From positions 9,610,001 through 9,674,000 of the forward strand of contig OZ059894.1 of NCBI GenBank assembly GCA_964057225.1: a DNA stretch of 64,000 nt, written 5' to 3'. Below, in pieces: positions 371 through 64,000 of this stretch. The position numbers were made by a program, and so were the translations under genes. This DNA is from Auanema rhodensis. Its lineage: Eukaryota > Animalia > Nematoda. Positions within the stretch are counted from its first letter, which is position 1; every line of letters starts with the position of its first letter. The notes under the pieces are model-generated. The model did not search any database and had not been told where the DNA came from. It saw only the letters and a program-made list of their open reading frames with translations.

Positions 371-3300
371 ATTCTCTTGCCCAGAATGGCAAGCTGGACC
401 ATGGTCTGCCTGTTCTGAGAAGTGTGGTGATGCTTTCCAATACAGATCCGTTACCTGTCGCTCCGAAAAGGAAGGAGAAGAAGGAAAACTCCTCCCCGCT
501 GATGTAATAGAATACATATAAGCTTCTATTTTAAAATTTCTTTAAGGCTTGTGATGCTGAAGCTACCGTTGAGACCGAAAGAACCTGTAACCTTGGACCA
601 TGCGAAGGACTCAAGTTCCAAACTTCTGAATGGAAATTGGTAAGAATTGTGGTTTCTATTATACATGTCTGCTTGTCTAACACATGAATGTGCCATAATG
701 TTGGCAGTTAGAACGAAAAAAGACTGTTTTACCAATATTAGTCAAATATGGCCCCGTGGCCTAATGGATAAGGCGTCGGTCTCCTAAACCGAAGATTGCA
801 GGTTCGAGTCCTGCCTGGGTCGAAATTTTGCATAAGCGTTTCGCTTTCATTAAGATTCCTATATAGCAGCTTTCATTAATATTCCTAACTGTTACGTTGT
901 TTCAGTGCTCCAAGTGTAACGATACTGAGGAAACTCGTGAAGTTAGTTGCACAGATACCAATGGAAGAGCCTATCCACTTGAGAAGTGCCTTGTCGACAA
1001 CACCACCGAAATCCCAATTGATACCAGGTATATTTAAAACAAATAAAAAATATTTAGCTATTGTTATTACAGATCCTGCGCCACCGTTCAGCCATGTCTT
1101 TACGAATGGACTGCCTCCCAATGGTCTAAGTGTTCCACTGAATGCGGACACGGACACAAGACTCGTCGTGTTGTCTGTGCTATTCATCAGTTGGGTGATC
1201 TCGAGGTTGTCGATGAAGGATTGTGCCAGGGAGAAAAACCAGGAGACCGTGAAGACTGTACCAACGAAGAAAAGTGTACTGGAACCTGGTACACTGGACC
1301 TTGGTCAGACTGTACTGAAAAGTGAGTTGAATAAGTTTCAAGCCTTAAAACTGTTGAGAATTATTCAGATGTGGGGGAGGAAAACAAGACCGTTTGACTG
1401 TTTGCTTAAACTACGACAAGAAGCCAGTCCCAGAATGGTGTGACGAAGCTGAGAAGCCTGCTGAATCCCAAGATTGTAACGTTGAGGAGTGCCCAAGTAT
1501 GCTGATTTTCTGAATTTATTTTACTAATTTTCTGGTTTCAGCTTGCTTTGATTCTGAGTTCGGTTGCTGCCCAGATAACTCTACTTTCGCTACTGGCGAA
1601 TATAACCTAGGATGCTCCAACTGCTCTGAGACCGAATTCGGATGCTGCGGAGATAACGTTACTGAGGCCACTGGAGCCAATCTTCTTGGATGCCCAGAAT
1701 TCGTCGAAAGTGAATTGACTGTCAGCGACTTGAAGGAAGCTGAAAGCACCAATGAAGTTGAAGGATCTGGAGATTCAGCTGCTGATGCAACTGAATGCAA
1801 TGTCACCAGTGAAGATGGAGATCAAGCTACTGTTAACTGCAAGGTTGCCAACATGACGAATGTTGAAGACCTTGAGCTTTTGGGTAATATTTCATGCTAA
1901 AACAATTGCTGTTTCAAATATTTATTTAAAGGTAATGAAACTATGGACGGTAACGCTACTATTCATTGTTCCAAGACTGAATTCGGATGTTGTCCCGATT
2001 GGTACACTCCAGCTTCTGGAAAGGGTAATGAAGGATGTGAACCATTTGTTCTCGGTATATTAAAAACTATTAAAAACTCACAAACATCTTATTTGTTTAG
2101 GAAACTGTAATGGAACTCAATATGGATGCTGTATTGATGAAGTTACTCTTGCTCGTGGACCCAACTACGAAGGATGCGGAGAACCATCTTGTGCAGCTTC
2201 CCTCTATGGTTGCTGTAAGGATCGTAAAACTATTGCTTTCGGGCCTCACTATGATGGATGTGAACGGTATTAAGGCATTATTGAAAAAACCTTCAACAAC
2301 TGCTTTATTTCAGTTCTTCTTTCCCATGTGAGCTCTCTAGCTTCGGATGTTGCCCAGATGGAGAAACTGCTGCCCTTGGAAAGAACGGAACTGGATGTGG
2401 AGAAAACTGCCTCACCACTAAGTATGCTTACTAATATGAAGATCATACTGTGAATTTGGTTGTTTAGGTATGGATGTTGCCCAGATGGAATTGCCACTGC
2501 TAAGGGACATCACAACGAAGGATGCGGATGTGAATACGCTCAATATGGATGTTGCCCAGACGGAAAGACTTCTGCCAAGGGATCTGGATTCGTTGGATGC
2601 CCAGAAAGCTGCGCTCAAAGTAATATTTATTCTAATAAAAATAAATAATTTCATACATATCATTTAGGTCAATTCGGATGCTGCCCTGATGGTAAGACCT
2701 CCGCTCTTGGACCACGCAAGGAAGGATGCCCATGCCAATACACCAGATACGGGTGCTGCCCAGACGGTGAAACCACTGCCCTTGGACCAAAGCTCGAAGG
2801 ATGCGACGACTGCCGTTATGGAAAGCACGGATGCTGCCCTGATGGAGTTACTAAAGCCCGTGGACCAAATGAACAAGGATGCCCCGCTACTACCACTCCA
2901 CCATTCATCATGGATGGAACCGTCTCACCACACAAGATTCATAGCTGCTCCCTTCCTCAACACGCAGGAGAGGTCTGCAAGGCCGGATACAAACTTGTAA
3001 GATAGAAAAAATTAATGCATGATATATACATATGAATTCAGAAATGGTCTTACGATATCAACGAGGGTCGTTGCGTTCAATTCTGGTACGGAGGATGCGG
3101 TGGAAATGAAAACCTTTATCAAACTAAGGAAATGTGCGAAACCATCTGTATCGAACCACCTGGCAAGGGACGTTGTTATCTTCCCAGAGTTATGGGACCA
3201 GAGCGTTGTGGACAAAACGTTGCAAGATACTACTACAATCCCCAAATCCACCAATGTGAGGCCTTCTGGTGGCACGGATGTCTTGGAAACGCCAACAATT

Positions 3301-5085
3301 TCGCGTCTTGGGAAGAGTGCAGCGTATGATGAAAGAAGTAGTGTGCCAAATAAAATATTATCTGTTTCAGACCTTCTGTAGAGATGTTACATTCTCAGAA
3401 GAAGCCTCAGCTCCTCCAGCTGCCCCAGTTGCTCCAATTAGCCCTGCTGAGCAACCTCGTTATGAAACTCAAACTATCGACATCGATGTAGCTGCTCCAA
3501 GCGCTGTTGACACCCGTGTTATGCGTAAGTATTAATTCTTATGAACTACTCTCATTAGTTCGTTATAGCAACCATGGAAGAAGTATGTCGTATGAATCTT
3601 GACGCCGGACCATGCCAAGATTACACTGAGCAGTTCTACTACGATGCCGCAAGAGGGACTTGTCAGCCATTCACATTCGGAGGATGTGGTGGAAACAACA
3701 ATCGCTTCCGTACTTCCGAAGAGTGTCTTCAGCGTTGTGGATTCCTCAACCCCAATGCAGCTGCTGTTGCCCAACAACACCTTCAACCAGCTCCACAACA
3801 TTCCCGCGTCGGTAAGACGATTCAAGTCATAACAGCCTTTTAAAACAAAAATATTTCAGAAGATCCAGCTCCTCCACCAGAGAGACCAGCTCCAATTATT
3901 CCCTGTATGTTCTATTTTTATTACAGAAATGATTTTTCGAAAAGAAACAATATAAAATCACAGAAAACCTAAAAATAAAAGAAAAAATTGTTTGAAAATA
4001 TCAAAAAGATGTATTGTTACATACCCTATCCCTTTGTTTCCTATGTTTTCTTAGTCTTATAGAAAGAGCACGCGTTTTTTATATATTTTCAAAATCTTTT
4101 ATCTTTTCTGTTCATGGATAGTTGATCTATGATGACGATGCATGTCTGGAATCATGTGTGTTTCAGCTACCCAAGGAAAAACTCGCGAGGCTTGCCACTT
4201 ACCAGTTGGTGTTGGAACTTGTGGTGGAAATTTCGATAGCTGGTACTACGAAGTTGCTACTGGCAGCTGTGTCAAGTTCAAGTATTCTGGATGCGGAGGA
4301 AACGGAAACAGATTCCACACTCAGGAAGCCTGTGAATCAATCTGTATTCCTGTCCCCGTTCAGCACGGTAAGTAAAGCATGTTGAAAGCCCTTAGTTTGC
4401 ATGTAAATTCTGTATTGTTCTGTTTATAACACTACTTCAACTTCAATTCCACTCCTACAGCCTTAATACTTAGCTTCAACAGCTTAATTGTAATTCAAAA
4501 ATAAAATATTTGTTTAAGATGGACCACCAGGTTCCAACACTGTTTGTGACGAGAATAAGGATTCTGGATCATGTACCGATTTCACCACCAAGTGGTTCTA
4601 CAACAAACTTGACGGTACCTGCCACAGATTCCACTATGGAGGATGCAAAGGAAACGGAAACAAATTCGACACAGAAAAACAATGCAGGGCTGCTTGCGAG
4701 AATCACAACGGTTAATCTTTAAAATATTATTTGATCTCACCCATCTATGCTCTTTTGCTTATTTATACTTTTCGAAGTCAAACTTCAAAACAAACCTAAA
4801 CTCCTTCTATTACAATTTCATATTAGTCAATTTCTTTTTTGAACTAAAATATTGAAAGAAATTTTTCATATTTTTTGAAAAACATGATCTCCATCATTGC
4901 TTCAACTTTCTTCAGATCGTTGCACTTTACCAATGATCAGAGGTCCCTGTGGTGGAAAGCACACCTACTATTATTACAACAAAGACACAGAACAGTGTGA
5001 AACCTTCACTTATGGAGGTTGTCTTGGTAACACTAATCGCTTCGCCACCATTGAGGAGTGCCAGGCTCGTTGTCCACGTAAGTAA
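371..5085 (+). CDS. mig-6: Papilin short isoform (MIG-6S-like, 6 Kunitz domains)
   Basis: After the 6th Kunitz, read-through of the donor (CCA C|GTAAGT at 5078) gives CPRK* at 5085; AATAAA at 5776. This matches the known 6-Kunitz short form of MIG-6. Confidence 0.8.
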
Positions 5086-8000
5086 GATGTTCATTCAGAC
5101 AACTTTTTCATACAATTCTACAAAATCTCTCAGTTAAAAGTCCGTTTAATTAAATTTGTTTAACTGATTCAGGTTTATGGTCTTGATATTAGAAAGTTGT
5201 TAATAGTAATTTGACAGTACAATCTTCTTTTACTTTCTTCTTCTTCTACTCTCCCAAATCTTAAAATTACACGTTGTTCATCACTTTATGCCGTTGTCGT
5301 AACTTGCCTTGAATCCTCCTCCATTGTGTTGGTACACATGCACACGCATAACGTTCTCTAGACCATTGTTATCATATTTTTTTTCCTGAAACATTTGAAG
5401 TAATGAATTCATTCAGCTCCTTCAAACATCAGGTAATGTATTCTACTCTTCTAATTCAGTTTTCTCTTTTTTTCCAATGAGGCATTGAGGACGATTTTGC
5501 GTGTGTATATGTGCGTACCCTTTTATCGAAGTATACCTTCAATCTAATAGATATTTGGTTATTTCTTCACATTTGTTTTGATTTTTCCTAATTTCCGCTT
5601 TTCTCTTTATACTTTCTGCGCTATTCATATCTTGCGCATAATGCTTACTATCATCTCTACTCTTCCAGTTTTCTCTAAATCTCTTTTTTTTCTATCTATC
5701 ACTCTATCTCGTCTTAGTATTCGTTCCTGAATGCTAATTATTGTTAAATTGATTAGCAGAAATCCATTTTTTTTCAATAAAGGTCTGTAATCGATTACAA
5801 ATTCGCTAAAACTGCAATTAAGTAAGACAGATTAAACAGCTTAACCTTTGTTCACTAACTTTTTTGTCCGCTTCATGTGTTTGCTATCCTGTTTTTAACT
5901 TTTTCGCTTTGCGTTTGTGTGTGTTGTGAATTGCTAACATTTATAGAACAACGTGAACGAGAACAACCATTAGCCAACTTGATTGCCCCGGGAGCTGCTG
6001 AGAATACTCTACTGCAACTGGTGCCTACCGATGCTAAAGATTTTCAAATAATCAACCATCAACAAAATACAGAACGATGTTTCTTACCTAAAGAAACTGG
6101 AAGATGTCGGTAAGTTAATGTTTCTGTGCTTCTACTAATTTCTGTGTGAATTCACTTCATCAGCTGAACACTATACGAACAAGAAAACACAAGTCTACAA
6201 AAATGAAAAGAACTATGAATTACAAAAGCTTATTGAAACGTTATTTACTTTCATCTTTGAAACGACAATATCAACCTGTGGACGCAAATTCCATTTTATT
6301 GTCCATTTCCGTGAATTTTCAACTCTAACGGAAGCTGCATTCGTTTTCATATCAATGACAACCAAAATTTCGACCCAGGCAGGACTCGAACCTGCAATCT
6401 TCGGTTTAGGAGACCGACGCCTTATCCATTAGGCCACGGGGCCACAAATTCCATTTTATTGTCCATTTCCGTGAATTTTCATCTCTTACGGAAGCTGCAA
6501 TAGTTTTCATATCATTGGCAACCAAAATTTCGACCCAGGCAGGACTCGAACCTGCAATCTTCGGTTTAGGAGACCGACGCCTTATCCATTAGGCCACGGG
6601 GCCACAAATTCCATTTTAAAGTCCATTTCTGTGAATTTTCAACTCTTACGGAAGCTGCATTGGTTTTCATATCAATGGCAACCAAAATTTCGACCCAGGC
6701 AGGACTCGAACCTGCAATCTTCGGTTTAGGAGACCGACGCCTTATCCATTAGGCCACGGGGCCACAAATTCCATTTTAAAGTCCATTTCTGTGAATTTTC
6801 AACTCTTACGGAAGCTGCATTAGTTTTCATATCAATGACAACCAAAATTTCGACCCAGGCAGGACTCGAACCTGCAATCTTCGGTTTAGGAGACCGACGC
6901 CTTATCCATTAGGCCACGGGGCCACAAATTCCATTTTATAGTCCATTTCCGTGAATTTTCATCTCTTACGGAAGCTGCAATAGTTTTCATATCATTGGCA
7001 ACCAAAATTTCGACCCAGGCAGGACTCGAACCTGCAATCTTCGGTTTAGGAGACCGACGCCTTATCCATTAGGCCACGGGGCCACAAATTCCATTTTAAA
7101 GTCCATTTCTGTGAATTTTCAACTCTTACGGAAGCTGCATTGGTTTTCATATCAATGGCAACCAAAATTTCGACCCAGGCAGGACTCGAACCTGCAATCT
7201 TCGGTTTAGGAGACCGACGCCTTATCCATTAGGCCACGGGGCCACAAATTCCATTTTATAGTCCATTTCTGTGAATTTTCTTCTCTTACGGAAGCTGCAT
7301 TGGTTTTCATATCAATGGCAACCAAAATTTCGACCCAGGCAGGACTCGAACCTGCAATCTTCGGTTTAGGAGACCGACGCCTTATCCATTAGGCCACGGG
7401 GCCACAAATTCCATTTTAAAGTCCATTTCTGTGAATTTTCAACTCTTACGGAAGCTGCATTGGTTTTCATATCAATGGCAACCAAAATTTCGACCCAGGC
7501 AGGACTCGAACCTGCAATCTTCGGTTTAGGAGACCGACGCCTTATCCATTAGGCCACGGGGCCACAAATTCCATTTTATAGTCCATTTCTGTGAATTTTC
7601 TTCTCTTACGGAAGCTGCATTGGTTTTCATATCAATGGCAACCAAAATTTCGACCCAGGCAGGACTCGAACCTGCAATCTTCGGTTTAGGAGACCGACGC
7701 CTTATCCATTAGGCCACGGGGCCACAAATTCCATTTTAAAGTCCATTTCTGTGAATTTTCAACTCTTACGGAAGCTGCATTAGTTTTCATATCAATGACA
7801 ACCAAAATTTCGACCCAGGCAGGACTCGAACCTGCAATCTTCGGTTTAGGAGACCGACGCCTTATCCATTAGGCCACGGGGCCACAAATTCCATTTTATT
7901 GTCCATTTCCGTGAATTTTCATCTCTTACGGAAGCTGCATTAGTTTTCATATCAATGACAACCAAAATTTCGACCCAGGCAGGACTCGAACCTGCAATCT

Positions 8001-11000
8001 TCGGTTTAGGAGACCGACGCCTTATCCATTAGGCCACGGGGCCACAAATTCCATTTTATAGTCCATTTCTGTGAATTTTCTTCTCTTACGGAAGCTGCAT
8101 TGGTTTTCATATCAATGGCAACCAAAATTTCGACCCAGGCAGGACTCGAACCTGCAATCTTCGGTTTAGGAGACCGACGCCTTATCCATTAGGCCACGGG
8201 GCCACAAATTCCATTTTATAGTCCATTTCTGTGAATTTTCAACTCTTACGGAAGCTGCATTCGTTTTCATATCAATGACAACCAAAATTTCGACCCAGGC
8301 AGGACTCGAACCTGCAATCTTCGGTTTAGGAGACCGACGCCTTATCCATTAGGCCACGGGGCCACAAATTCCATTTTATTGTCCATTTCCGTGAATTTTC
8401 ATCTCTCACGGAAGCTGCAATAGTTTTCATATCATTGGCAACCAAAATTTCGACCCAGGCAGGACTCGAACCTGCAATCTTCGGTTTAGGAGACCGACGC
8501 CTTATCCATTAGGCCACGGGGCCACAAATTCCATTTTATAGTCCATTTCTGTGAATTTTCAACTCTTACGGAAGCTGCATTCGTTTTCATATCAATGACA
8601 ACCAAAATTTCGACCCAGGCAGGACTCGAACCTGCAATCTTCGGTTTAGGAGACCGACGCCTTATCCATTAGGCCACGGGGCCACAAATTCCATTTTATA
8701 GTCCATTTCTGTGAATTTTCTTCTCTTACGGAAGCTGCATTGGTTTTCATATCAATGGCAACCAAAATTTCGACCCAGGCAGGACTCGAACCTGCAATCT
8801 TCGGTTTAGGAGACCGACGCCTTATCCATTAGGCCACGGGGCCACAAATTCCATTTTATAGTCCATTTCTGTGAATTTTCTTCTCTTACGGAAGCTGCAT
8901 TGGTTTTCATATCAATGGCAACCAAAATTTCGACCCAGGCAGGACTCGAACCTGCAATCTTCGGTTTAGGAGACCGACGCCTTATCCATTAGGCCACGGG
9001 GCCACAAATTCCATTTTATAGTCCATTTCTGTGAATTTTCAACTCTTACGGAAGCTGCATTCGTTTTCATATCAATGACAACCAAAATTTCGACCCAGGC
9101 AGGACTCGAACCTGCAATCTTCGGTTTAGGAGACCGACGCCTTATCCATTAGGCCACGGGGCCACAAATTCCATTTTATTGTCCATTTCCGTGAATTTTC
9201 ATCTCTCACGGAAGCTGCAATAGTTTTCATATCATTGGCAACCAAAATTTCGACCCAGGCAGGACTCGAACCTGCAATCTTCGGTTTAGGAGACCGACGC
9301 CTTATCCATTAGGCCACGGGGCCACAAATTCCATTTTATAGTCCATTTCTGTGAATTTTCTTCTCTTACGGAAGCTGCATTGGTTTTCATATCAATGGCA
9401 ACCAAAATTTCGACCCAGGCAGGACTCGAACCTGCAATCTTCGGTTTAGGAGACCGACGCCTTATCCATTAGGCCACGGGGCCACAAATTCCATTTTATA
9501 GTCCATTTCTGTGAATTTTCAACTCTTACGGAAGCTGCATTCGTTTTCATATCAATGACAACCAAAATTTCGACCCAGGCAGGACTCGAACCTGCAATCT
9601 TCGGTTTAGGAGACCGACGCCTTATCCATTAGGCCACGGGGCCACAAATTCCATTTTATAGTCCATTTCTGTGAATTTTCTTCTCTTACGGAAGCTGCAT
9701 TGGTTTTCATATCAATGGCAACCAAAATTTCGACCCAGGCAGGACTCGAACCTGCAATCTTCGGTTTAGGAGACCGACGCCTTATCCATTAGGCCACGGG
9801 GCCACAAATTCCATTTTAAAGTCCATTTCTGTGAATTTTCAACTCTTACGGAAGCTGCATTAGTTTTCATAGCAATGACAACCAAAATTTCGACCCAGGC
9901 AGGACTCGAACCTGCAATCTTCGGTTTAGGAGACCGACGCCTTATCCATTAGGCCACGGGGCCACAAATTCCATTTTATAGTCCATTTCTGTGAATTTTC
10001 AACTCTTACGGAAGCTGCATTCGTTTTCATATCAATGACAACCAAAATTTCGACCCAGGCAGGACTCGAACCTGCAATCTTCGGTTTAGGAGACCGACGC
10101 CTTATCCATTAGGCCACGGGGCCACAAATTCCATTTTATTGTCCATTTCCGTGAATTTTCATCTCTCACGGAAGCTGCATTGGTTTTCATATCAATGGCA
10201 ACCAAAATTTCGACCCAGGCAGGACTCGAACCTGCAATCTTCGGTTTAGGAGACCGACGCCTTATCCATTAGGCCACGGGGCCACAAATTCCATTTTATA
10301 GTCCATTTCCGTGAATTTTCATCTCTTACGGAAGCTGCAATAGTTTTCATATCATTGGCAACCAAAATTTCGACCCAGGCAGGACTCGAACCTGCAATCT
10401 TCGGTTTAGGAGACCGACGCCTTATCCATTAGGCCACGGGGCCACAAATTCCATTTTAAAGTCCATTTCTGTGAATTTTCTTCTCTTACGGAAGCTGCAT
10501 TGGTTTTCATATCAATGGCAACCAAAATTTCGACCCAGGCAGGACTCGAACCCGCAATCTTCGGTTTAGGAGACCGACGCCTTATCCATTAGGCCACGGG
10601 GCCACAAATTCCATTTTAAAGTCCATTTCTGTGAATTTTCAACTCTTACGGAAGCTGCATTAGTTTTCATATCAATGACAACCAAAATTTCGACCCAGGC
10701 AGGACTCGAACCTGCAATCTTCGGTTTAGGAGACCGACGCCTTATCCATTAGGCCACGGGGGCAAAAATCCATTTTATTGTCCATTTCCGTGAATTTTCA
10801 TCTCTTACGGAAGCTGCAATAGTTTTCATATCAATGACAACCAAAATTTCGACCCAGGCAGGACTCGAACCTGCAATCTTCGGTTTAGGAAACCGACGCC
10901 TTATCCATTAGGCCACGGGGCCACAAATTCCATTTTATTGTCCATTTCCGTGAATTTTCATCTCTTACGGAAGCTGCAATAGTTTTCATATCATTGGCAA

Positions 11001-12876
11001 CCAAAATTTCGACCCAGGCAGGACTCGAACCTGCAATCTTCGGTTTAGGAGACCGACGCCTTATCCATTAGGCCACGGGGCCTCAAATTCCATTTTATTG
11101 TCCATTTCCGTGAATTTTCATCTCTTACGGAAGCTGCAATAGTTTTCATATCATTGGCAACCAAAATTTCGACCCAGGCAGGACTCGAACCTGCAATCTT
11201 CGGTTTAGGAGACCGACGCCTTATCCATTAGGCCACGGGGCCACAAATTCCATTTTATTGTCCATTTCCGTGAATTTTCATCTCTTACGGAAGCTGCAAT
11301 AGTTTTCATATCATTGGCAACCAAAATTTCGACCCAGGCAGGACTCGAACCTGCAATCTTCGGTTTAGGAGACCGACGCCTTGTCCATTAGGCCACGGGG
11401 CCACAAATTCCATTTTATTGTCTATTTCCGCGAATTTTCAACTCTTACGGAAGCTGCATTCGTTTTTATATCAATGACAACCAAAATTTCGACCCAGGCA
11501 GGACTCGAACCTGCAATCTTCGGTTTAGGAGACCGACGCCTTATCCATTAGGCCACGGGGCCACAAATTCTATTTTATTGTCCATTTCCGCGAATTTTCA
11601 ACTCTTACGGAAGCTGCACAGTCTATTTCCGAAGAAGCCATGAAGACATGAATCAGATATCTCATTTTTTAACAATTTTTTTCAGAGCAGCTCAAGTAAA
11701 GTTCTTCTATGATGCTCCTGCCCAACAATGTCGTCAATTCTACTATAGCGGTTGCGACGGAAACGATAATAGATTTGAAACTCTCGAAGATTGTCAATCT
11801 TCGTGCATGCCTCATCAGGTAAGCTATTGTGAAACATTTTAGAAGTTTATGACAGTTTCTAGGCTTTAACACTAGATGAAAGTTTCAATATTGCTGCCGA
11901 TGAAGCTGCAAGGTCTGTTGTTGATGGTGTTGTTACTGGAAGAGCGTTTAGTGATCCACGCATGGACGAAATACAGACATATAGTGCTGAACAGAATGAC
12001 GAAAATCTTCAATTGCTTGATAAAGAAGAACGCATCGTGGTATCTAGGACCGCATTGGTAGAAATAATAATCTGAATACTTTACAGAAACAACGAAAGTC
12101 CAAATCTCATCCTACATCAGCTCTACCTGAACTATGCCAATTACCTGAAGAAAAAGGATCTTGTTACGGTAGCATCTTGAGATGGAGGTATGCTAACAGC
12201 AAATATGAATAATCACGTTTGGATTCAGATATAATCCTGAAACAAGTGCATGTGTGACCTTCCTCTACACTGGATGTGATGGAAATGCTAATCAATTCAC
12301 CAGCTTTGAATCCTGTGAAAGAGCATGCGGAGTAGATCGTGATACGGATGTATGCTCTTTACGTACAGACCCAGGAGATTGTGAAGAGTCTGTGACAAAA
12401 TGGTATTATAACAAACGATTAGGAAGGTGTCAAATGATGTTATACACTGGATGCGGAGGAAATGGAAACAGGTGAAGACTTTCTGTTCTAGAATTATCCA
12501 TCTGACTCAACTGTTTTTATAGATTCTCTTCCCGTGAAGAATGTGATTTGTTGTGTCGAGAAGAACTTTCTTGGGGTGATCAAGTCAACATCTGGTAAGA
12601 GTAAAATGAATTTTTCTCCTATAAATGTTTTATTTTAGCAAAGTCCCCCGATCTTCTGGACCATGCAATGATGCAATCTCGATGTGGTACTTCGATGACA
12701 GTACAGCTGAATGTAAACAATTCACATATTCTGGATGCCGTGGCAATAAGAATAGGTAAAATTGAAGAAATGAAAAACGAAATCTTTAACTTGAATAATA
12801 TTTCAGATTCTTCACCAAGCAAAAATGCGAAAGTAGTTGTGCTCACCTTTCCTCCAGATATGCGAGTTTATTCTAA
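371..12876 (+). CDS. mig-6: Papilin/lacunin (MIG-6), 3' part, long isoform; 5' end outside window
   Basis: Manually spliced GT-AG exons encode TSP1 repeats (WQAGPWSACSEKCG, WTASQWSKCSTECG), many (Y/F)GCCPDG lagrin repeats and 10 Kunitz domains (e.g. CRMNLDAGPC...FTFGGCGGNNNRF). The long form joins 5077 to 5947 and 6109 to 11686 and ends CESSCAHLSSRYASLF* (TAA 12874-12876); AATAAA at 12969. Confidence 0.9.
750..822 (+). tRNA. tRNA-Arg(CCT), solo copy in papilin intron 640-905
   Basis: GGCCCCG TG GCCT AATGGATA AGGC G TCGGT CTCCTAA ACCGA AGATT GCAGG TTCGAGT CCTGC CTGGGTC G: cloverleaf with A and B boxes, anticodon CCT, A20, followed by AAATTTT terminator. Confidence 0.97.
5776..5781 (+). terminator. 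AATAAA poly(A) signal of short papilin isoform
   Basis: AATAAA after a T-rich 3' UTR, downstream of the 5085 stop and before the next acceptor at 5946. Confidence 0.55.
6371..6443 (-). tRNA. tRNA-Arg(CCT) array copy 1
   Basis: Exact reverse complement of 750-822. Confidence 0.95.
6531..6603 (-). tRNA. tRNA-Arg(CCT) array copy 2
   Basis: Identical to consensus. Confidence 0.95.
6691..6763 (-). tRNA. tRNA-Arg(CCT) array copy 3
   Basis: Identical to consensus. Confidence 0.95.
6851..6923 (-). tRNA. tRNA-Arg(CCT) array copy 4
   Basis: Identical to consensus. Confidence 0.95.
7011..7083 (-). tRNA. tRNA-Arg(CCT) array copy 5
   Basis: Identical to consensus. Confidence 0.95.
7171..7243 (-). tRNA. 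tRNA-Arg(CCT) array copy 6
   Basis: Identical to consensus. Confidence 0.95.
7331..7403 (-). tRNA. tRNA-Arg(CCT) array copy 7
   Basis: Identical to consensus. Confidence 0.95.
7491..7563 (-). tRNA. tRNA-Arg(CCT) array copy 8
   Basis: Identical to consensus. Confidence 0.95.
7651..7723 (-). tRNA. tRNA-Arg(CCT) array copy 9
   Basis: Identical to consensus. Confidence 0.95.
7811..7883 (-). tRNA. tRNA-Arg(CCT) array copy 10
   Basis: Identical to consensus. Confidence 0.95.
7971..8043 (-). tRNA. tRNA-Arg(CCT) array copy 11
   Basis: Identical to consensus. Confidence 0.95.
8131..8203 (-). tRNA. tRNA-Arg(CCT) array copy 12
   Basis: Identical to consensus. Confidence 0.95.
8291..8363 (-). tRNA. 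tRNA-Arg(CCT) array copy 13
   Basis: Identical to consensus. Confidence 0.95.
8451..8523 (-). tRNA. tRNA-Arg(CCT) array copy 14
   Basis: Identical to consensus. Confidence 0.95.
8611..8683 (-). tRNA. tRNA-Arg(CCT) array copy 15
   Basis: Identical to consensus. Confidence 0.95.
8771..8843 (-). tRNA. tRNA-Arg(CCT) array copy 16
   Basis: Identical to consensus. Confidence 0.95.
8931..9003 (-). tRNA. tRNA-Arg(CCT) array copy 17
   Basis: Identical to consensus. Confidence 0.95.
9091..9163 (-). tRNA. tRNA-Arg(CCT) array copy 18
   Basis: Identical to consensus. Confidence 0.95.
9251..9323 (-). tRNA. tRNA-Arg(CCT) array copy 19
   Basis: Identical to consensus. Confidence 0.95.
9411..9483 (-). 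tRNA. tRNA-Arg(CCT) array copy 20
   Basis: Identical to consensus. Confidence 0.95.
9571..9643 (-). tRNA. tRNA-Arg(CCT) array copy 21
   Basis: Identical to consensus. Confidence 0.95.
9731..9803 (-). tRNA. tRNA-Arg(CCT) array copy 22
   Basis: Identical to consensus. Confidence 0.95.
9891..9963 (-). tRNA. tRNA-Arg(CCT) array copy 23
   Basis: Identical to consensus. Confidence 0.95.
10051..10123 (-). tRNA. tRNA-Arg(CCT) array copy 24
   Basis: Identical to consensus. Confidence 0.95.
10211..10283 (-). tRNA. tRNA-Arg(CCT) array copy 25
   Basis: Identical to consensus. Confidence 0.95.
10371..10443 (-). tRNA. tRNA-Arg(CCT) array copy 26
   Basis: Identical to consensus. Confidence 0.95.
10531..10603 (-). 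tRNA. tRNA-Arg(CCT) array copy 27 (T-stem variant)
   Basis: T-stem GCAGG>GCGGG, an A-U pair becomes G-U. Confidence 0.92.
10691..10763 (-). tRNA. tRNA-Arg(CCT) array copy 28 (acceptor-stem variant)
   Basis: G2>C breaks an acceptor pair; 5' flank altered with a 1-bp deletion. Confidence 0.8.
10850..10922 (-). tRNA. tRNA-Arg(CCT) array copy 29 (C32>U variant)
   Basis: Anticodon loop TTCCTAA; anticodon unchanged. Confidence 0.9.
11010..11082 (-). tRNA. tRNA-Arg(CCT) array copy 30
   Basis: Identical to consensus. Confidence 0.95.
11170..11242 (-). tRNA. tRNA-Arg(CCT) array copy 31
   Basis: Identical to consensus. Confidence 0.95.
11330..11402 (-). tRNA. tRNA-Arg(CCT) array copy 32 (D-loop variant)
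   Basis: D-loop AATGGATA>AATGGACA. Confidence 0.92.
11490..11562 (-). tRNA. tRNA-Arg(CCT) array copy 33
   Basis: Identical to consensus. Confidence 0.95.

Positions 12877-27576: not shown

Positions 27577-64000
<36,424 letters not shown>

What the first reader, a model, noticed from the sequence alone, without database searches (positions are those of the whole stretch)
6285..11618. Intronic tandem array of 33 intact tRNA-Arg(CCT) genes on a 160-bp repeat
Seen: 33 head-to-tail units, each a complete Pol III gene (A box, B box, TTTT terminator 3 nt after the 3' end) plus an 87-bp spacer. They fill 5.3 kb of a 5.58-kb papilin intron, antisense to the host, and 29 of 33 tRNAs are identical. Known: AGG is a rare Arg codon in rhabditids, and nematode tRNA genes are usually dispersed. 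Satellite-like tDNA arrays are known mainly from other lineages such as Entamoeba, and clustered tDNAs can act as TFIIIC/condensin chromatin boundaries. In the highly expressed-looking exons here Arg is mostly CGT/AGA. Inference: 34 copies of the rarest Arg isoacceptor at one locus exceed plausible decoding need. The array may be a tDNA satellite with a structural role, a dosage-variable or stage-specific tRNA/tRF source, or a neutral recent amplification.
Basis: partly seen in the sequence, partly recalled or inferred. Interest (0 to 1): 0.88.

Follow-up and report, generated by a model that had tools for sequence, protein, structure and literature searches.

The report
Intronic tandem array of tRNA-Arg genes
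A nematode papilin intron really is filled by 33 head-to-tail, intact-looking arginine tRNA genes, but this genome (most likely Auanema rhodense, reported to carry about 19,500 tRNA genes) holds many such arrays, so this is one well-preserved, copy-number-variable example and not a unique oddity.

Summary
There are 33.3 units of 160 bp at 6285-11618. Each unit is a 73-nt tRNA-Arg(CCT) on the minus strand plus an 87-nt spacer. 29 of the 33 tRNAs are identical, and an identical single copy lies at 750-822 (+). A spliced RNA contig joins 6109 to 11686, so the array fills 96% of a real 5,576-nt intron that splits a Kunitz domain of the long papilin isoform.

Independent DNA runs carry both array junctions and multi-copy word depth, so it is not an artefact. 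Spacer depth relative to flank differs between samples (about 8-11x, 8-20x and 56-133x, against 33 assembled), which suggests copy-number variation.

Within the array the spacers are 17 times more diverse than the tRNAs. All 11 shared variants lie in spacers. New singleton variants hit tRNA and spacer about equally, which is the pattern expected under purifying selection on the tRNA.

The "excess over decoding need" argument loses force. Earlier notes of this scan list arrays for at least ten other tRNA kinds in the same genome. A 2026 preprint on Auanema rhodense reports 19,554 tRNA genes and tandem tRNA blocks.

Best reading: an unequal-crossover tDNA array in soma-retained DNA, probably still a working Pol III gene cluster. 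Transcription is untested. The scan found such arrays before on other DNA of this genome.

The parts
6285..11618 (-). Tandem array of 33.3 units of 160 bp (87-nt spacer plus 73-nt tRNA-Arg(CCT)). It starts at spacer position 1 and ends at spacer position 56.
   Evidence: TRF; ARAGORN; Rfam; unit table
6371..6443 (-). First tRNA-Arg(CCT) gene of the array. The others follow every 160 bp, up to 11490-11562.
   Evidence: Rfam RF00005, 64.4 bits, full-length model
10531..11402 (-). Stretch of the array that holds the only four variant tRNAs (units 27, 28, 29, 32: A51G, C32U, D-loop U>C, G2C). All are singletons.
   Evidence: (60.2-63.9 bits)
750..822 (+). Single tRNA-Arg(CCT) gene identical to the array consensus, in an upstream papilin intron and in sense with the host. 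Its flanks are unrelated to the array spacer except for the trailer AAATTTTG.
6110..11685 (+). Host intron (GT...AG, 5,576 nt) that carries the array. It splits a Kunitz domain.
   Evidence: RNA contig of run X11 covers 5947-6109 and continues with the letters of 11686 onward. Sequence. Kunitz profile positions 14-53 lie in the downstream exon.
5947..6109 (+). Long-isoform exon upstream of the array intron. It is spliced from donor 5078 and ends with the first part of a Kunitz domain.
   Evidence: RNA contig junctions; frame; sequence
11686..11818 (+). Exon downstream of the array intron (rest of the Kunitz domain). Its 3' donor at 11819 is inferred from GTAAG.
5079..5794 (+). Probable 3' end of the short papilin isoform. 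Read-through of donor 5078 gives Arg-Lys-stop. AATAAA lies at 5776-5781, and the RNA contig (depth 250, against 32 for the long-isoform exon) ends at 5794.

Best explanation
This is a genuine, locally amplified tandem array of intact tRNA-Arg(CCT) genes. It was built and is continually reshuffled by unequal exchange between 160-bp units. It sits in an intron of the long isoform of a papilin (mig-6-like) gene, in the gene-bearing and therefore soma-retained part of what is most likely the Auanema rhodense genome. It is one of many single-isoacceptor tRNA arrays in that genome. Its copy number appears to differ between sequenced samples.

The tRNA part has been kept free of any variant that spread, while the spacer diverged. 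I therefore infer that the copies are, or recently were, transcribed by RNA polymerase III from their internal A and B boxes, terminated at the T4 run, and used as a multi-copy source of tRNA-Arg(CCT), much as a 5S rDNA array works. The intronic, antisense position is most likely incidental.

Shown: structure, integrity, intron, multi-copy state in independent data, and the diversity contrast. Inferred: unequal-exchange mechanism, purifying selection, transcription, soma retention and species.
For: Structure and integrity.

Real and not an assembly product: in run X4 a 5,514-nt contig crosses the left junction, and a 25,193-nt contig ends at the right junction with the loose end CAGTCTATTTCC, which is window 11619 onward. 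In X1 and X2, contigs of about 1 kb cross the left junction. Spacer word depth is 8-133 times the flank.

Unequal exchange: there are 14 spacer haplotypes in a mosaic order. Exact repeats of 602, 466 and 424 bp occur at offsets of 5, 2 and 3 units. Neighbouring units are no more alike than distant ones.

Constraint on the tRNA: pi is 0.33% in the tRNA against 5.6% in the spacer. Shared variant sites are 0 of 73 against 11 of 87 (Fisher p=0.001; binomial p=0.0012). Singletons are 4 to 6, close to the neutral 46%. The singleton-versus-shared contrast gives p=0.035. No tRNA-body variant reaches 10% in any of four runs, whereas five spacer sites do.

Genome context: this scan holds notes of Ile, Ala, Arg(ACG), Tyr, Asp, Val, Trp, His, Pro and Thr arrays. 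The preprint 10.64898/2026.08.27.747507 reports 19,554 tRNA genes, only 215 of them pseudogenes, and tandem tRNA blocks.

Host gene works across the array: a spliced long-isoform contig is present.
Against: No direct evidence of Pol III transcription. The RNA contigs over the array (summed depth 4-42, against 32 for the exon) include spacer and run past the T4 terminator. They fit pre-mRNA or DNA background multiplied by copy number as well as pre-tRNA.

The terminator is only four T. Every copy has a C6:U67 mismatch in the acceptor stem.

Homogeneity of the tRNA part could also come from gene conversion with dispersed tRNA-Arg(CCT) copies, which exist (distinct flanks appear among the loose ends), without any selection on the array.

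Clustered tRNA genes are silenced in Arabidopsis (PMC7544208).

Word depth of contigs is declared by the tool to be no copy number. X1's 56-133x could reflect further arrays of the same unit elsewhere.

Species identity rests on literature fit and on other agents' notes, not on a sequence comparison made here.
Confidence: 0.6

Rival explanations
1. Inert or epigenetically silenced tDNA minisatellite. The array is a by-product of this genome's general tendency to amplify tRNA units. It is not transcribed, and dispersed copies supply tRNA-Arg(CCT). The tRNA part stays uniform through gene conversion or because the array is young.
For: The genome-wide excess of tRNA genes makes most copies dispensable. 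Arabidopsis tandem tDNA clusters are silenced in most tissues (PMC7544208, PMC12308677, listed). Other tRNA-Arg(CCT) loci with different flanks exist. In run X4 the exact tRNA 3' part is at about 34x the flank while this spacer is at about 10x. There is no clear pre-tRNA signal.
Against: An inert repeat should let tRNA variants spread as spacer variants did, yet 0 of 11 shared variants lie in the tRNA (p about 0.001). Spacer diversity of 5.6% argues the units are not all recent. A box, B box, terminator and cloverleaf are intact in all 33 copies.
Confidence: 0.27
2. Regulatory or structural element. The antisense tDNA array acts through TFIIIC, Pol III or condensin as a roadblock or boundary that tunes the short/long papilin isoform ratio or local chromatin. 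This is the reading of note s1-391455 and the first reader's 'structural role'.
For: The array lies only in the long-isoform part, downstream of the short isoform's poly(A) site at about 5794. In run X11 the short-isoform 3' end has 8 times the depth of the long-isoform exon. tDNA repeats have been proposed as boundaries in human 1q23.3 (PMC4041453).
Against: The long isoform is made and correctly spliced across the array. An 8:1 ratio needs no roadblock, because alternative polyadenylation alone can give it. The apparent copy number varies about ten-fold between samples, which is hard to reconcile with a tuned element. Other arrays of this genome sit in introns in either orientation (unverified notes).
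Confidence: 0.08
3. Assembly artefact. A single tRNA gene, or a few, was expanded by the assembler.
For: The number of units cannot be read from short-read contigs. No spanning read was seen here.
Against: Word depth on the spacer is 8-133 times the single-copy flank in three DNA runs. Both junctions are recovered in independent contigs. The mosaic of 14 spacer haplotypes is not what a collapse or expansion error produces. 5.3 kb is well within long-read length.
Confidence: 0.02

Closest known systems
Tandem tRNA blocks of Auanema rhodense (bioRxiv 10.64898/2026.08.27.747507, Aug 2026)
   Same: Probably the same genome. The preprint counts 19,554 tRNA genes, nearly all intact by tRNAscan-SE, and reports tandemly repeated blocks of several tRNA loci.
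   Different: The preprint describes them among germline-restricted (eliminated) repeats and only in summary. This array lies inside an expressed somatic-type gene, so it should be retained in body cells. Its intronic position, unit structure, diversity pattern and copy-number differences are not described in the text I could read (tables are held only as images).
Arabidopsis thaliana chromosome 1 tRNA-Ser/Tyr/Tyr (SYY) cluster and tRNA-Pro clusters (PMC2886086, PMC7544208, PMC12308677)
   Same: Head-to-tail array of tens of intact tRNA genes, evolved by unequal crossing-over, and far above decoding need.
   Different: The Arabidopsis unit is about 1.5 kb with three genes and lies in methylated heterochromatin, silent in most tissues. 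Here the unit is 160 bp with a single gene, lies in a euchromatic intron, and nematodes of this group generally lack cytosine methylation (background knowledge).
Entamoeba tRNA gene arrays (PMC2652664)
   Same: Satellite-like arrays that hold much of the tRNA complement. Spacers evolve fast while tRNAs stay constant.
   Different: Entamoeba units carry up to five different tRNAs with microsatellite-like spacers and hold almost all tRNA genes. Here there is one isoacceptor per array, and dispersed copies coexist with it.
Human 1q23.3 tRNA variable-number tandem repeat (PMC4041453)
   Same: A tandem repeat carrying tRNA genes, with 9-43 units per allele and strong copy-number variation.
   Different: The human unit is 7.3 kb, GC-rich and CTCF-bound with several tRNAs. 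It has been proposed as a boundary. No such protein motif was examined here.
Nematode 5S rDNA arrays (PMC8961926)
   Same: A Pol III gene in a short tandem unit, homogenised by unequal exchange and variable in copy number. This is the working model for how this array would function.
   Different: Different gene and promoter type (type 1 against type 2). 5S arrays are the sole source of their RNA.

Membership tests
Homogeneous tandem tRNA gene array (tDNA cluster) | Several tRNA genes of one isoacceptor, head-to-tail in one orientation at regular spacing | tested here: met
   33 genes, all on the minus strand, 160-bp period
Homogeneous tandem tRNA gene array (tDNA cluster) | Copies are full-length tRNAs with cloverleaf, A box, B box and a downstream T-run | tested here: met
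   RF00005 at 60-64 bits over model positions 1-71 for all 33. Boxes and AAATTTT trailer read from the sequence.
Homogeneous tandem tRNA gene array (tDNA cluster) | Transcribed by RNA polymerase III | tested here: inconclusive
   RNA contigs cover both tRNA and spacer at low summed depth and carry no strand information
Satellite / minisatellite DNA evolving by unequal exchange | Mosaic of unit variants, multi-unit exact duplicates, and copy number differing between individuals | tested here: met
   14 haplotypes; 602-bp exact repeat at a 5-unit offset. Spacer/flank depth is 8-11, 8-20 and 56-133 in three runs. Depth is only a rough proxy.
Satellite / minisatellite DNA evolving by unequal exchange | Sequence evolves without constraint on content | tested here: not met
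   The tRNA part carries no shared variant, against 11 in the spacer
tRNA-derived SINE | Dispersed copies with a tRNA-related head, an unrelated body, a tail and target-site duplications | tested here: not met
   Copies are tandem, not dispersed. The tRNA is intact. The spacer matches nowhere else in the window. The array flanks carry no decayed copies or duplications.
tDNA insulator / TFIIIC-condensin boundary | TFIIIC binding and barrier or roadblock activity | not testable with these tools
   Needs ChIP and genetics. The only relevant datum is that the host long isoform is spliced across the array.
Papilin (host gene) | TSP1 repeats followed by multiple Kunitz domains | tested here: met
   Pfam TSP1_ADAMTS 1.7e-9 and Kunitz_BPTI 7e-15 to 7e-22 in five exons. 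Ig and PLAC parts were not examined.
Germline-restricted (eliminated) repeat of Auanema rhodense | Lies beyond a break-site palindrome and is lost from somatic DNA | not tested
   Unverified notes place candidate borders 351 kb before and 8.3 Mb after the window. The array is inside an expressed extracellular-matrix gene. Nematode elimination works by breakage and not by excision, so retention is inferred.

The most novel reading that the evidence does not exclude
In an animal that discards about 60% of its germline genome, including most of its roughly 19,500 tRNA genes, from body cells, small arrays lodged in introns of retained genes, like this one, would be the somatic tRNA gene set. Soma and germline would then run on different tRNA gene dosages. 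The strain-variable length of this array would tune AGG decoding, and possibly, through convergent Pol III/Pol II traffic or antisense-tRNA sequences in the pre-mRNA, the long papilin isoform.
Probability: 0.15. Interest if true: 0.7.

Novelty: new member of a known kind. Interest (0 to 1): 0.4.

Why it matters
Tandem tRNA arrays are known from Entamoeba, plants, frogs, fish and humans. For the likely species the huge tRNA count is already in a preprint, so the array as such is not a new kind of thing.

Three points are worth keeping. First, this is a clean example, confirmed by spliced RNA, of a tRNA array nested in an intron of an essential matrix gene that must survive programmed DNA elimination. 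Second, the within-array contrast (spread variants only in spacers, fresh singletons in both) is a cheap sequence-only sign that array copies are under selection. It could be applied to all the arrays of this genome to sort working arrays from decaying ones. Third, the apparent ten-fold copy-number differences between samples make it a tractable locus for asking whether tRNA gene dosage matters in a genome that has far too many tRNA genes.

Tried and rejected
1. Decayed array copies or target-site duplications in the 175-nt and 67-nt intron remnants. Local alignments were no better than shuffles (p=0.16-0.95). An 11-nt match of the right flank to unit 33's spacer variant was dropped as not significant after allowing for the variants tried.

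2. Common origin of the singleton (750-822) and the array unit. The flanks are unrelated apart from the 8-nt trailer.

3. Spacer copies elsewhere in the window. Only chance 10-14-nt hits were found.

4. A strict higher-order repeat. None was found; identity is flat with distance.

5. Species identification by protein. A K-channel exon only placed the genome among clade V nematodes (94% to Ancylostoma).

6. Literature on nematode tRNA arrays. Five searches found none before one search found the Auanema preprint. The Caenorhabditis tRNA surveys (PMC13010820, PMC2888827) describe no such arrays.

7. Using RNA contig depth as evidence of expression. Rejected, because the signal is compatible with background multiplied by copy number.

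8. An upstream TATA-like motif (TATAAAA at -17 to -11 in 14 units, variant in the others). Noted, but too close to the gene for a standard TATA position, so it was not used as evidence.

9. The claim that AGG is the rarest Arg codon. Not borne out in 49 Arg codons of the window; the sample is too small to settle it.

Full report
**1. The observation**

ARAGORN reports 34 tRNA-Arg(CCT) genes in the window. Thirty-three are on the minus strand between 6370 and 11563 at 160-bp steps, and one is on the plus strand at 749-823. Tandem Repeats Finder gives a single array at 6285-11618 with period 160, 33.3 copies, 96% matches and no indels.

Rfam's tRNA model matches all 34 over its full length at 60.2-64.4 bits, against a gathering score of 29. 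The alignment marks one non-standard pair, C6:U67 in the acceptor stem. Every copy has it, including the singleton.

The 73-nt gene is identical in 29 of the 33 array copies and in the singleton. Read from the sequence, each copy has:
- A box TGGCCTAATGG
- B box GGTTCGAGTCC
- discriminator G
- a trailer AAA followed by TTTT (a run of only four T)

The spacers are 87 nt, except one of 86.

**2. The host gene and the intron**

Exons on the plus strand encode a TSP1 repeat and at least five Kunitz domains (Pfam), which is the architecture of papilin.

Contigs from an RNA run (X11) give the splicing directly:
- One 1,183-nt contig covers 5947-6109.
- That contig is preceded by the end of the exon that stops at 5078.
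- It is followed by the letters of 11686 onward.

The array therefore lies in a GT-AG intron, 6110-11685, of 5,576 nt. The array makes up 5,334 nt of it (96%). The intron interrupts a Kunitz domain: the profile's first 13 positions lie upstream and positions 14-53 lie downstream.

A second RNA contig of 747 nt runs unspliced through donor 5078 and ends at 5794. That is 13 nt after an AATAAA at 5776-5781. Read-through gives Arg-Lys-stop. This looks like the 3' end of a short isoform, at about eight times the depth of the long-isoform exon (250 against 32). The array is thus confined to the long-isoform part, antisense to it. The long isoform is nevertheless made and correctly spliced.

**3. Is it real, and how many copies?**

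Contigs of three DNA runs labelled as three organisms match the 715 nt of unique intron and exon to the left of the array without a single difference. They are therefore the same species or near-identical lines.

All three runs cross the left junction. In run X4 a 25-kb contig also ends at the right junction, with a loose end that equals window 11619 onward.

Word depth on the spacer interior, relative to the single-copy flank, is as follows:

| Run | Spacer depth / flank depth |
|---|---|
| X4 | 7.8-11.2 |
| X2 | 8.3-20.2 |
| X1 | 56-133 |
| Assembled window | 33 units |

The tool warns that summed contig depth is not a copy number, so these are rough figures. They still rule out a one-to-three-copy artefact and suggest roughly ten-fold differences between samples.

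The differences do not follow the depth of the tRNA body, which also collects related Arg tRNAs. That depth is about 400x in X1, 1,100-1,900x in X2 and 160-220x in X4. A simple difference in germline content of the samples is therefore not the obvious cause. Extra copies of the same unit elsewhere in the genome cannot be excluded.

In X4 the exact 3' part of this tRNA is at about 34x the flank, while the spacer is at about 10x. Several contigs also carry the tRNA with other flanks. Dispersed tRNA-Arg(CCT) genes, or other arrays of them, therefore exist.

**4. How the array evolves**

The spacers fall into 14 haplotypes arranged as a mosaic. Exact repeats of 602, 466 and 424 bp occur at offsets of five, two and three units. 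Adjacent units are no more alike than distant ones. This is the pattern of repeated unequal exchange involving one to several units, without a fixed higher-order repeat.

The flanking intron remnants contain no decayed units. The singleton's flanks are unrelated to the spacer apart from the trailer AAATTTTG. The array ends in mid-spacer, at position 56.

**5. Constraint on the tRNA**

Nucleotide diversity is 5.6% in the spacer and 0.33% in the tRNA.

| Variant class | In tRNA (73 nt) | In spacer (87 nt) | Test |
|---|---|---|---|
| Sites shared by two or more units | 0 | 11 | Fisher p=0.001; binomial p=0.0012 |
| Singletons | 4 | 6 | close to the 46% expected from length |

The contrast between singletons and shared variants is itself significant (p=0.035). 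New mutations thus hit both parts, but only spacer mutations have spread.

Three of the four tRNA singletons are structurally mild: A51G makes a G-U pair, and C32U and the D-loop U-to-C change lie in loops. The fourth (G2C) turns the G2-U71 wobble pair of the acceptor stem into a C-U mismatch. All four lie in units 27-32, near one edge of the array.

In the four public runs, no site in the tRNA body varies at 10% or more, whereas five spacer sites do.

The simplest reading is purifying selection on the array's tRNA copies. That implies they are expressed, or that variant copies are harmful. The alternative is gene conversion limited to the tRNA part, with dispersed copies as donors.

**6. Expression**

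Expression is not settled. RNA contigs cover the array at a summed depth of 4-42, while the unique intron beside it shows none. With 33 or more copies, a per-copy signal far below the contig threshold would add up to this. One contig also runs 12 nt past the tRNA 3' end, through the T4 run. Pre-mRNA, DNA carry-over and Pol III read-through all fit. Contigs carry no strand information.

**7. Context that changes the interpretation**

The scan's earlier notes on the same genome list tandem arrays of tRNA-Ile, Ala(AGC), Arg(ACG), Tyr, Asp(GTC), Val, Trp, His, Pro and Thr. Some exceed 60 kb and several lie in introns. These are unverified notes. The several-hundred- to almost two-thousand-fold depth of the Arg-like tRNA body is at least in line with them.

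A literature search led to the preprint 10.64898/2026.08.27.747507 on Auanema rhodense. It reports:
- a 180.9-Mb germline assembly
- 61% of the genome eliminated from the soma
- 19,554 tRNA genes, of which only 215 are pseudogenes
- tandem blocks of 5S, several tRNA loci and U2 among the germline-restricted repeats

Other agents of this scan identified the genome as A. rhodense from its break-site palindromes. The 2019 DNA and RNA runs that hold the window fit the 2019 genome paper of that species. I did not compare sequences myself, so the species is a strong inference and not a result.

The argument that 34 copies of one isoacceptor exceed need applies to the whole genome and does not single out this locus. 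In the window's exons AGG is 6 of 49 Arg codons, more than CGC or CGG. That sample is small.

**8. Soma retention**

Papilin is an extracellular-matrix gene, and it is spliced in whole-animal RNA. Nematode DNA elimination acts by chromosome breakage and telomere addition, not by excision and rejoining (preprint). Candidate borders noted by others lie 351 kb before and 8.3 Mb after the window. The array should therefore persist in body cells, unlike the large arrays in eliminated DNA. This is inference.

**9. Verdict**

The finding is real and well described, but it is a member of a known kind: a tandem tRNA gene array. The genome is one where such arrays are the rule and are already reported in summary form.

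Most likely (about 0.6) it is a working, copy-number-variable Pol III gene cluster maintained by unequal exchange and selection. A silenced by-product is the main rival (about 0.27). A regulatory role on papilin isoforms is possible but unsupported (about 0.08). An artefact is essentially excluded.

Noticed in passing
window 750-822 (+) versus 6371-11562 (-): The sense singleton and the 33 antisense copies lie in introns of the same long-isoform pre-mRNA. That transcript therefore contains a perfect 73-nt inverted repeat many times over, and 33 stretches complementary to mature tRNA-Arg(CCT). It is a possible source of double-stranded RNA.
   Followed up: no
window 5079-5794 (+): Short papilin isoform made by not using donor 5078: Arg-Lys-stop, AATAAA at 5776-5781, RNA contig end at 5794. 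Its depth is about 8 times that of the long-isoform exon in run X11.
   Followed up: partly
window 6444-6530 and every spacer, positions 11-17 on the plus strand: An upstream AT-rich motif lies 11-17 nt before each tRNA and occurs in three alleles: TATAAAA in 14 units, CAATAAAA in 11 and CTTTAAAA in 8. The most variable spacer sites fall inside it.
   Followed up: no
window 6400-6431 in public runs X1, X2, X4: The 5' half of the tRNA (D arm to anticodon stem) has word depth about 160 to 1,900 times the single-copy flank at 90% likeness, far above the spacer. Hundreds to thousands of related Arg-type tRNA copies therefore exist elsewhere in these samples, and the ratio differs about nine-fold between runs.
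   Followed up: partly
window 59297-60034 (+): Large exon of a voltage-gated K+ channel (Ion_trans, 1.8e-33), 94% identical to an Ancylostoma caninum protein. It was useful only to place the genome among clade V nematodes.
   Followed up: partly
window 37829-37910, 43258-43324, 46598-46658: Simple (AG)n, (TC)n and (ATG)n microsatellites. These are the only other tandem repeats in the window.
   Followed up: no
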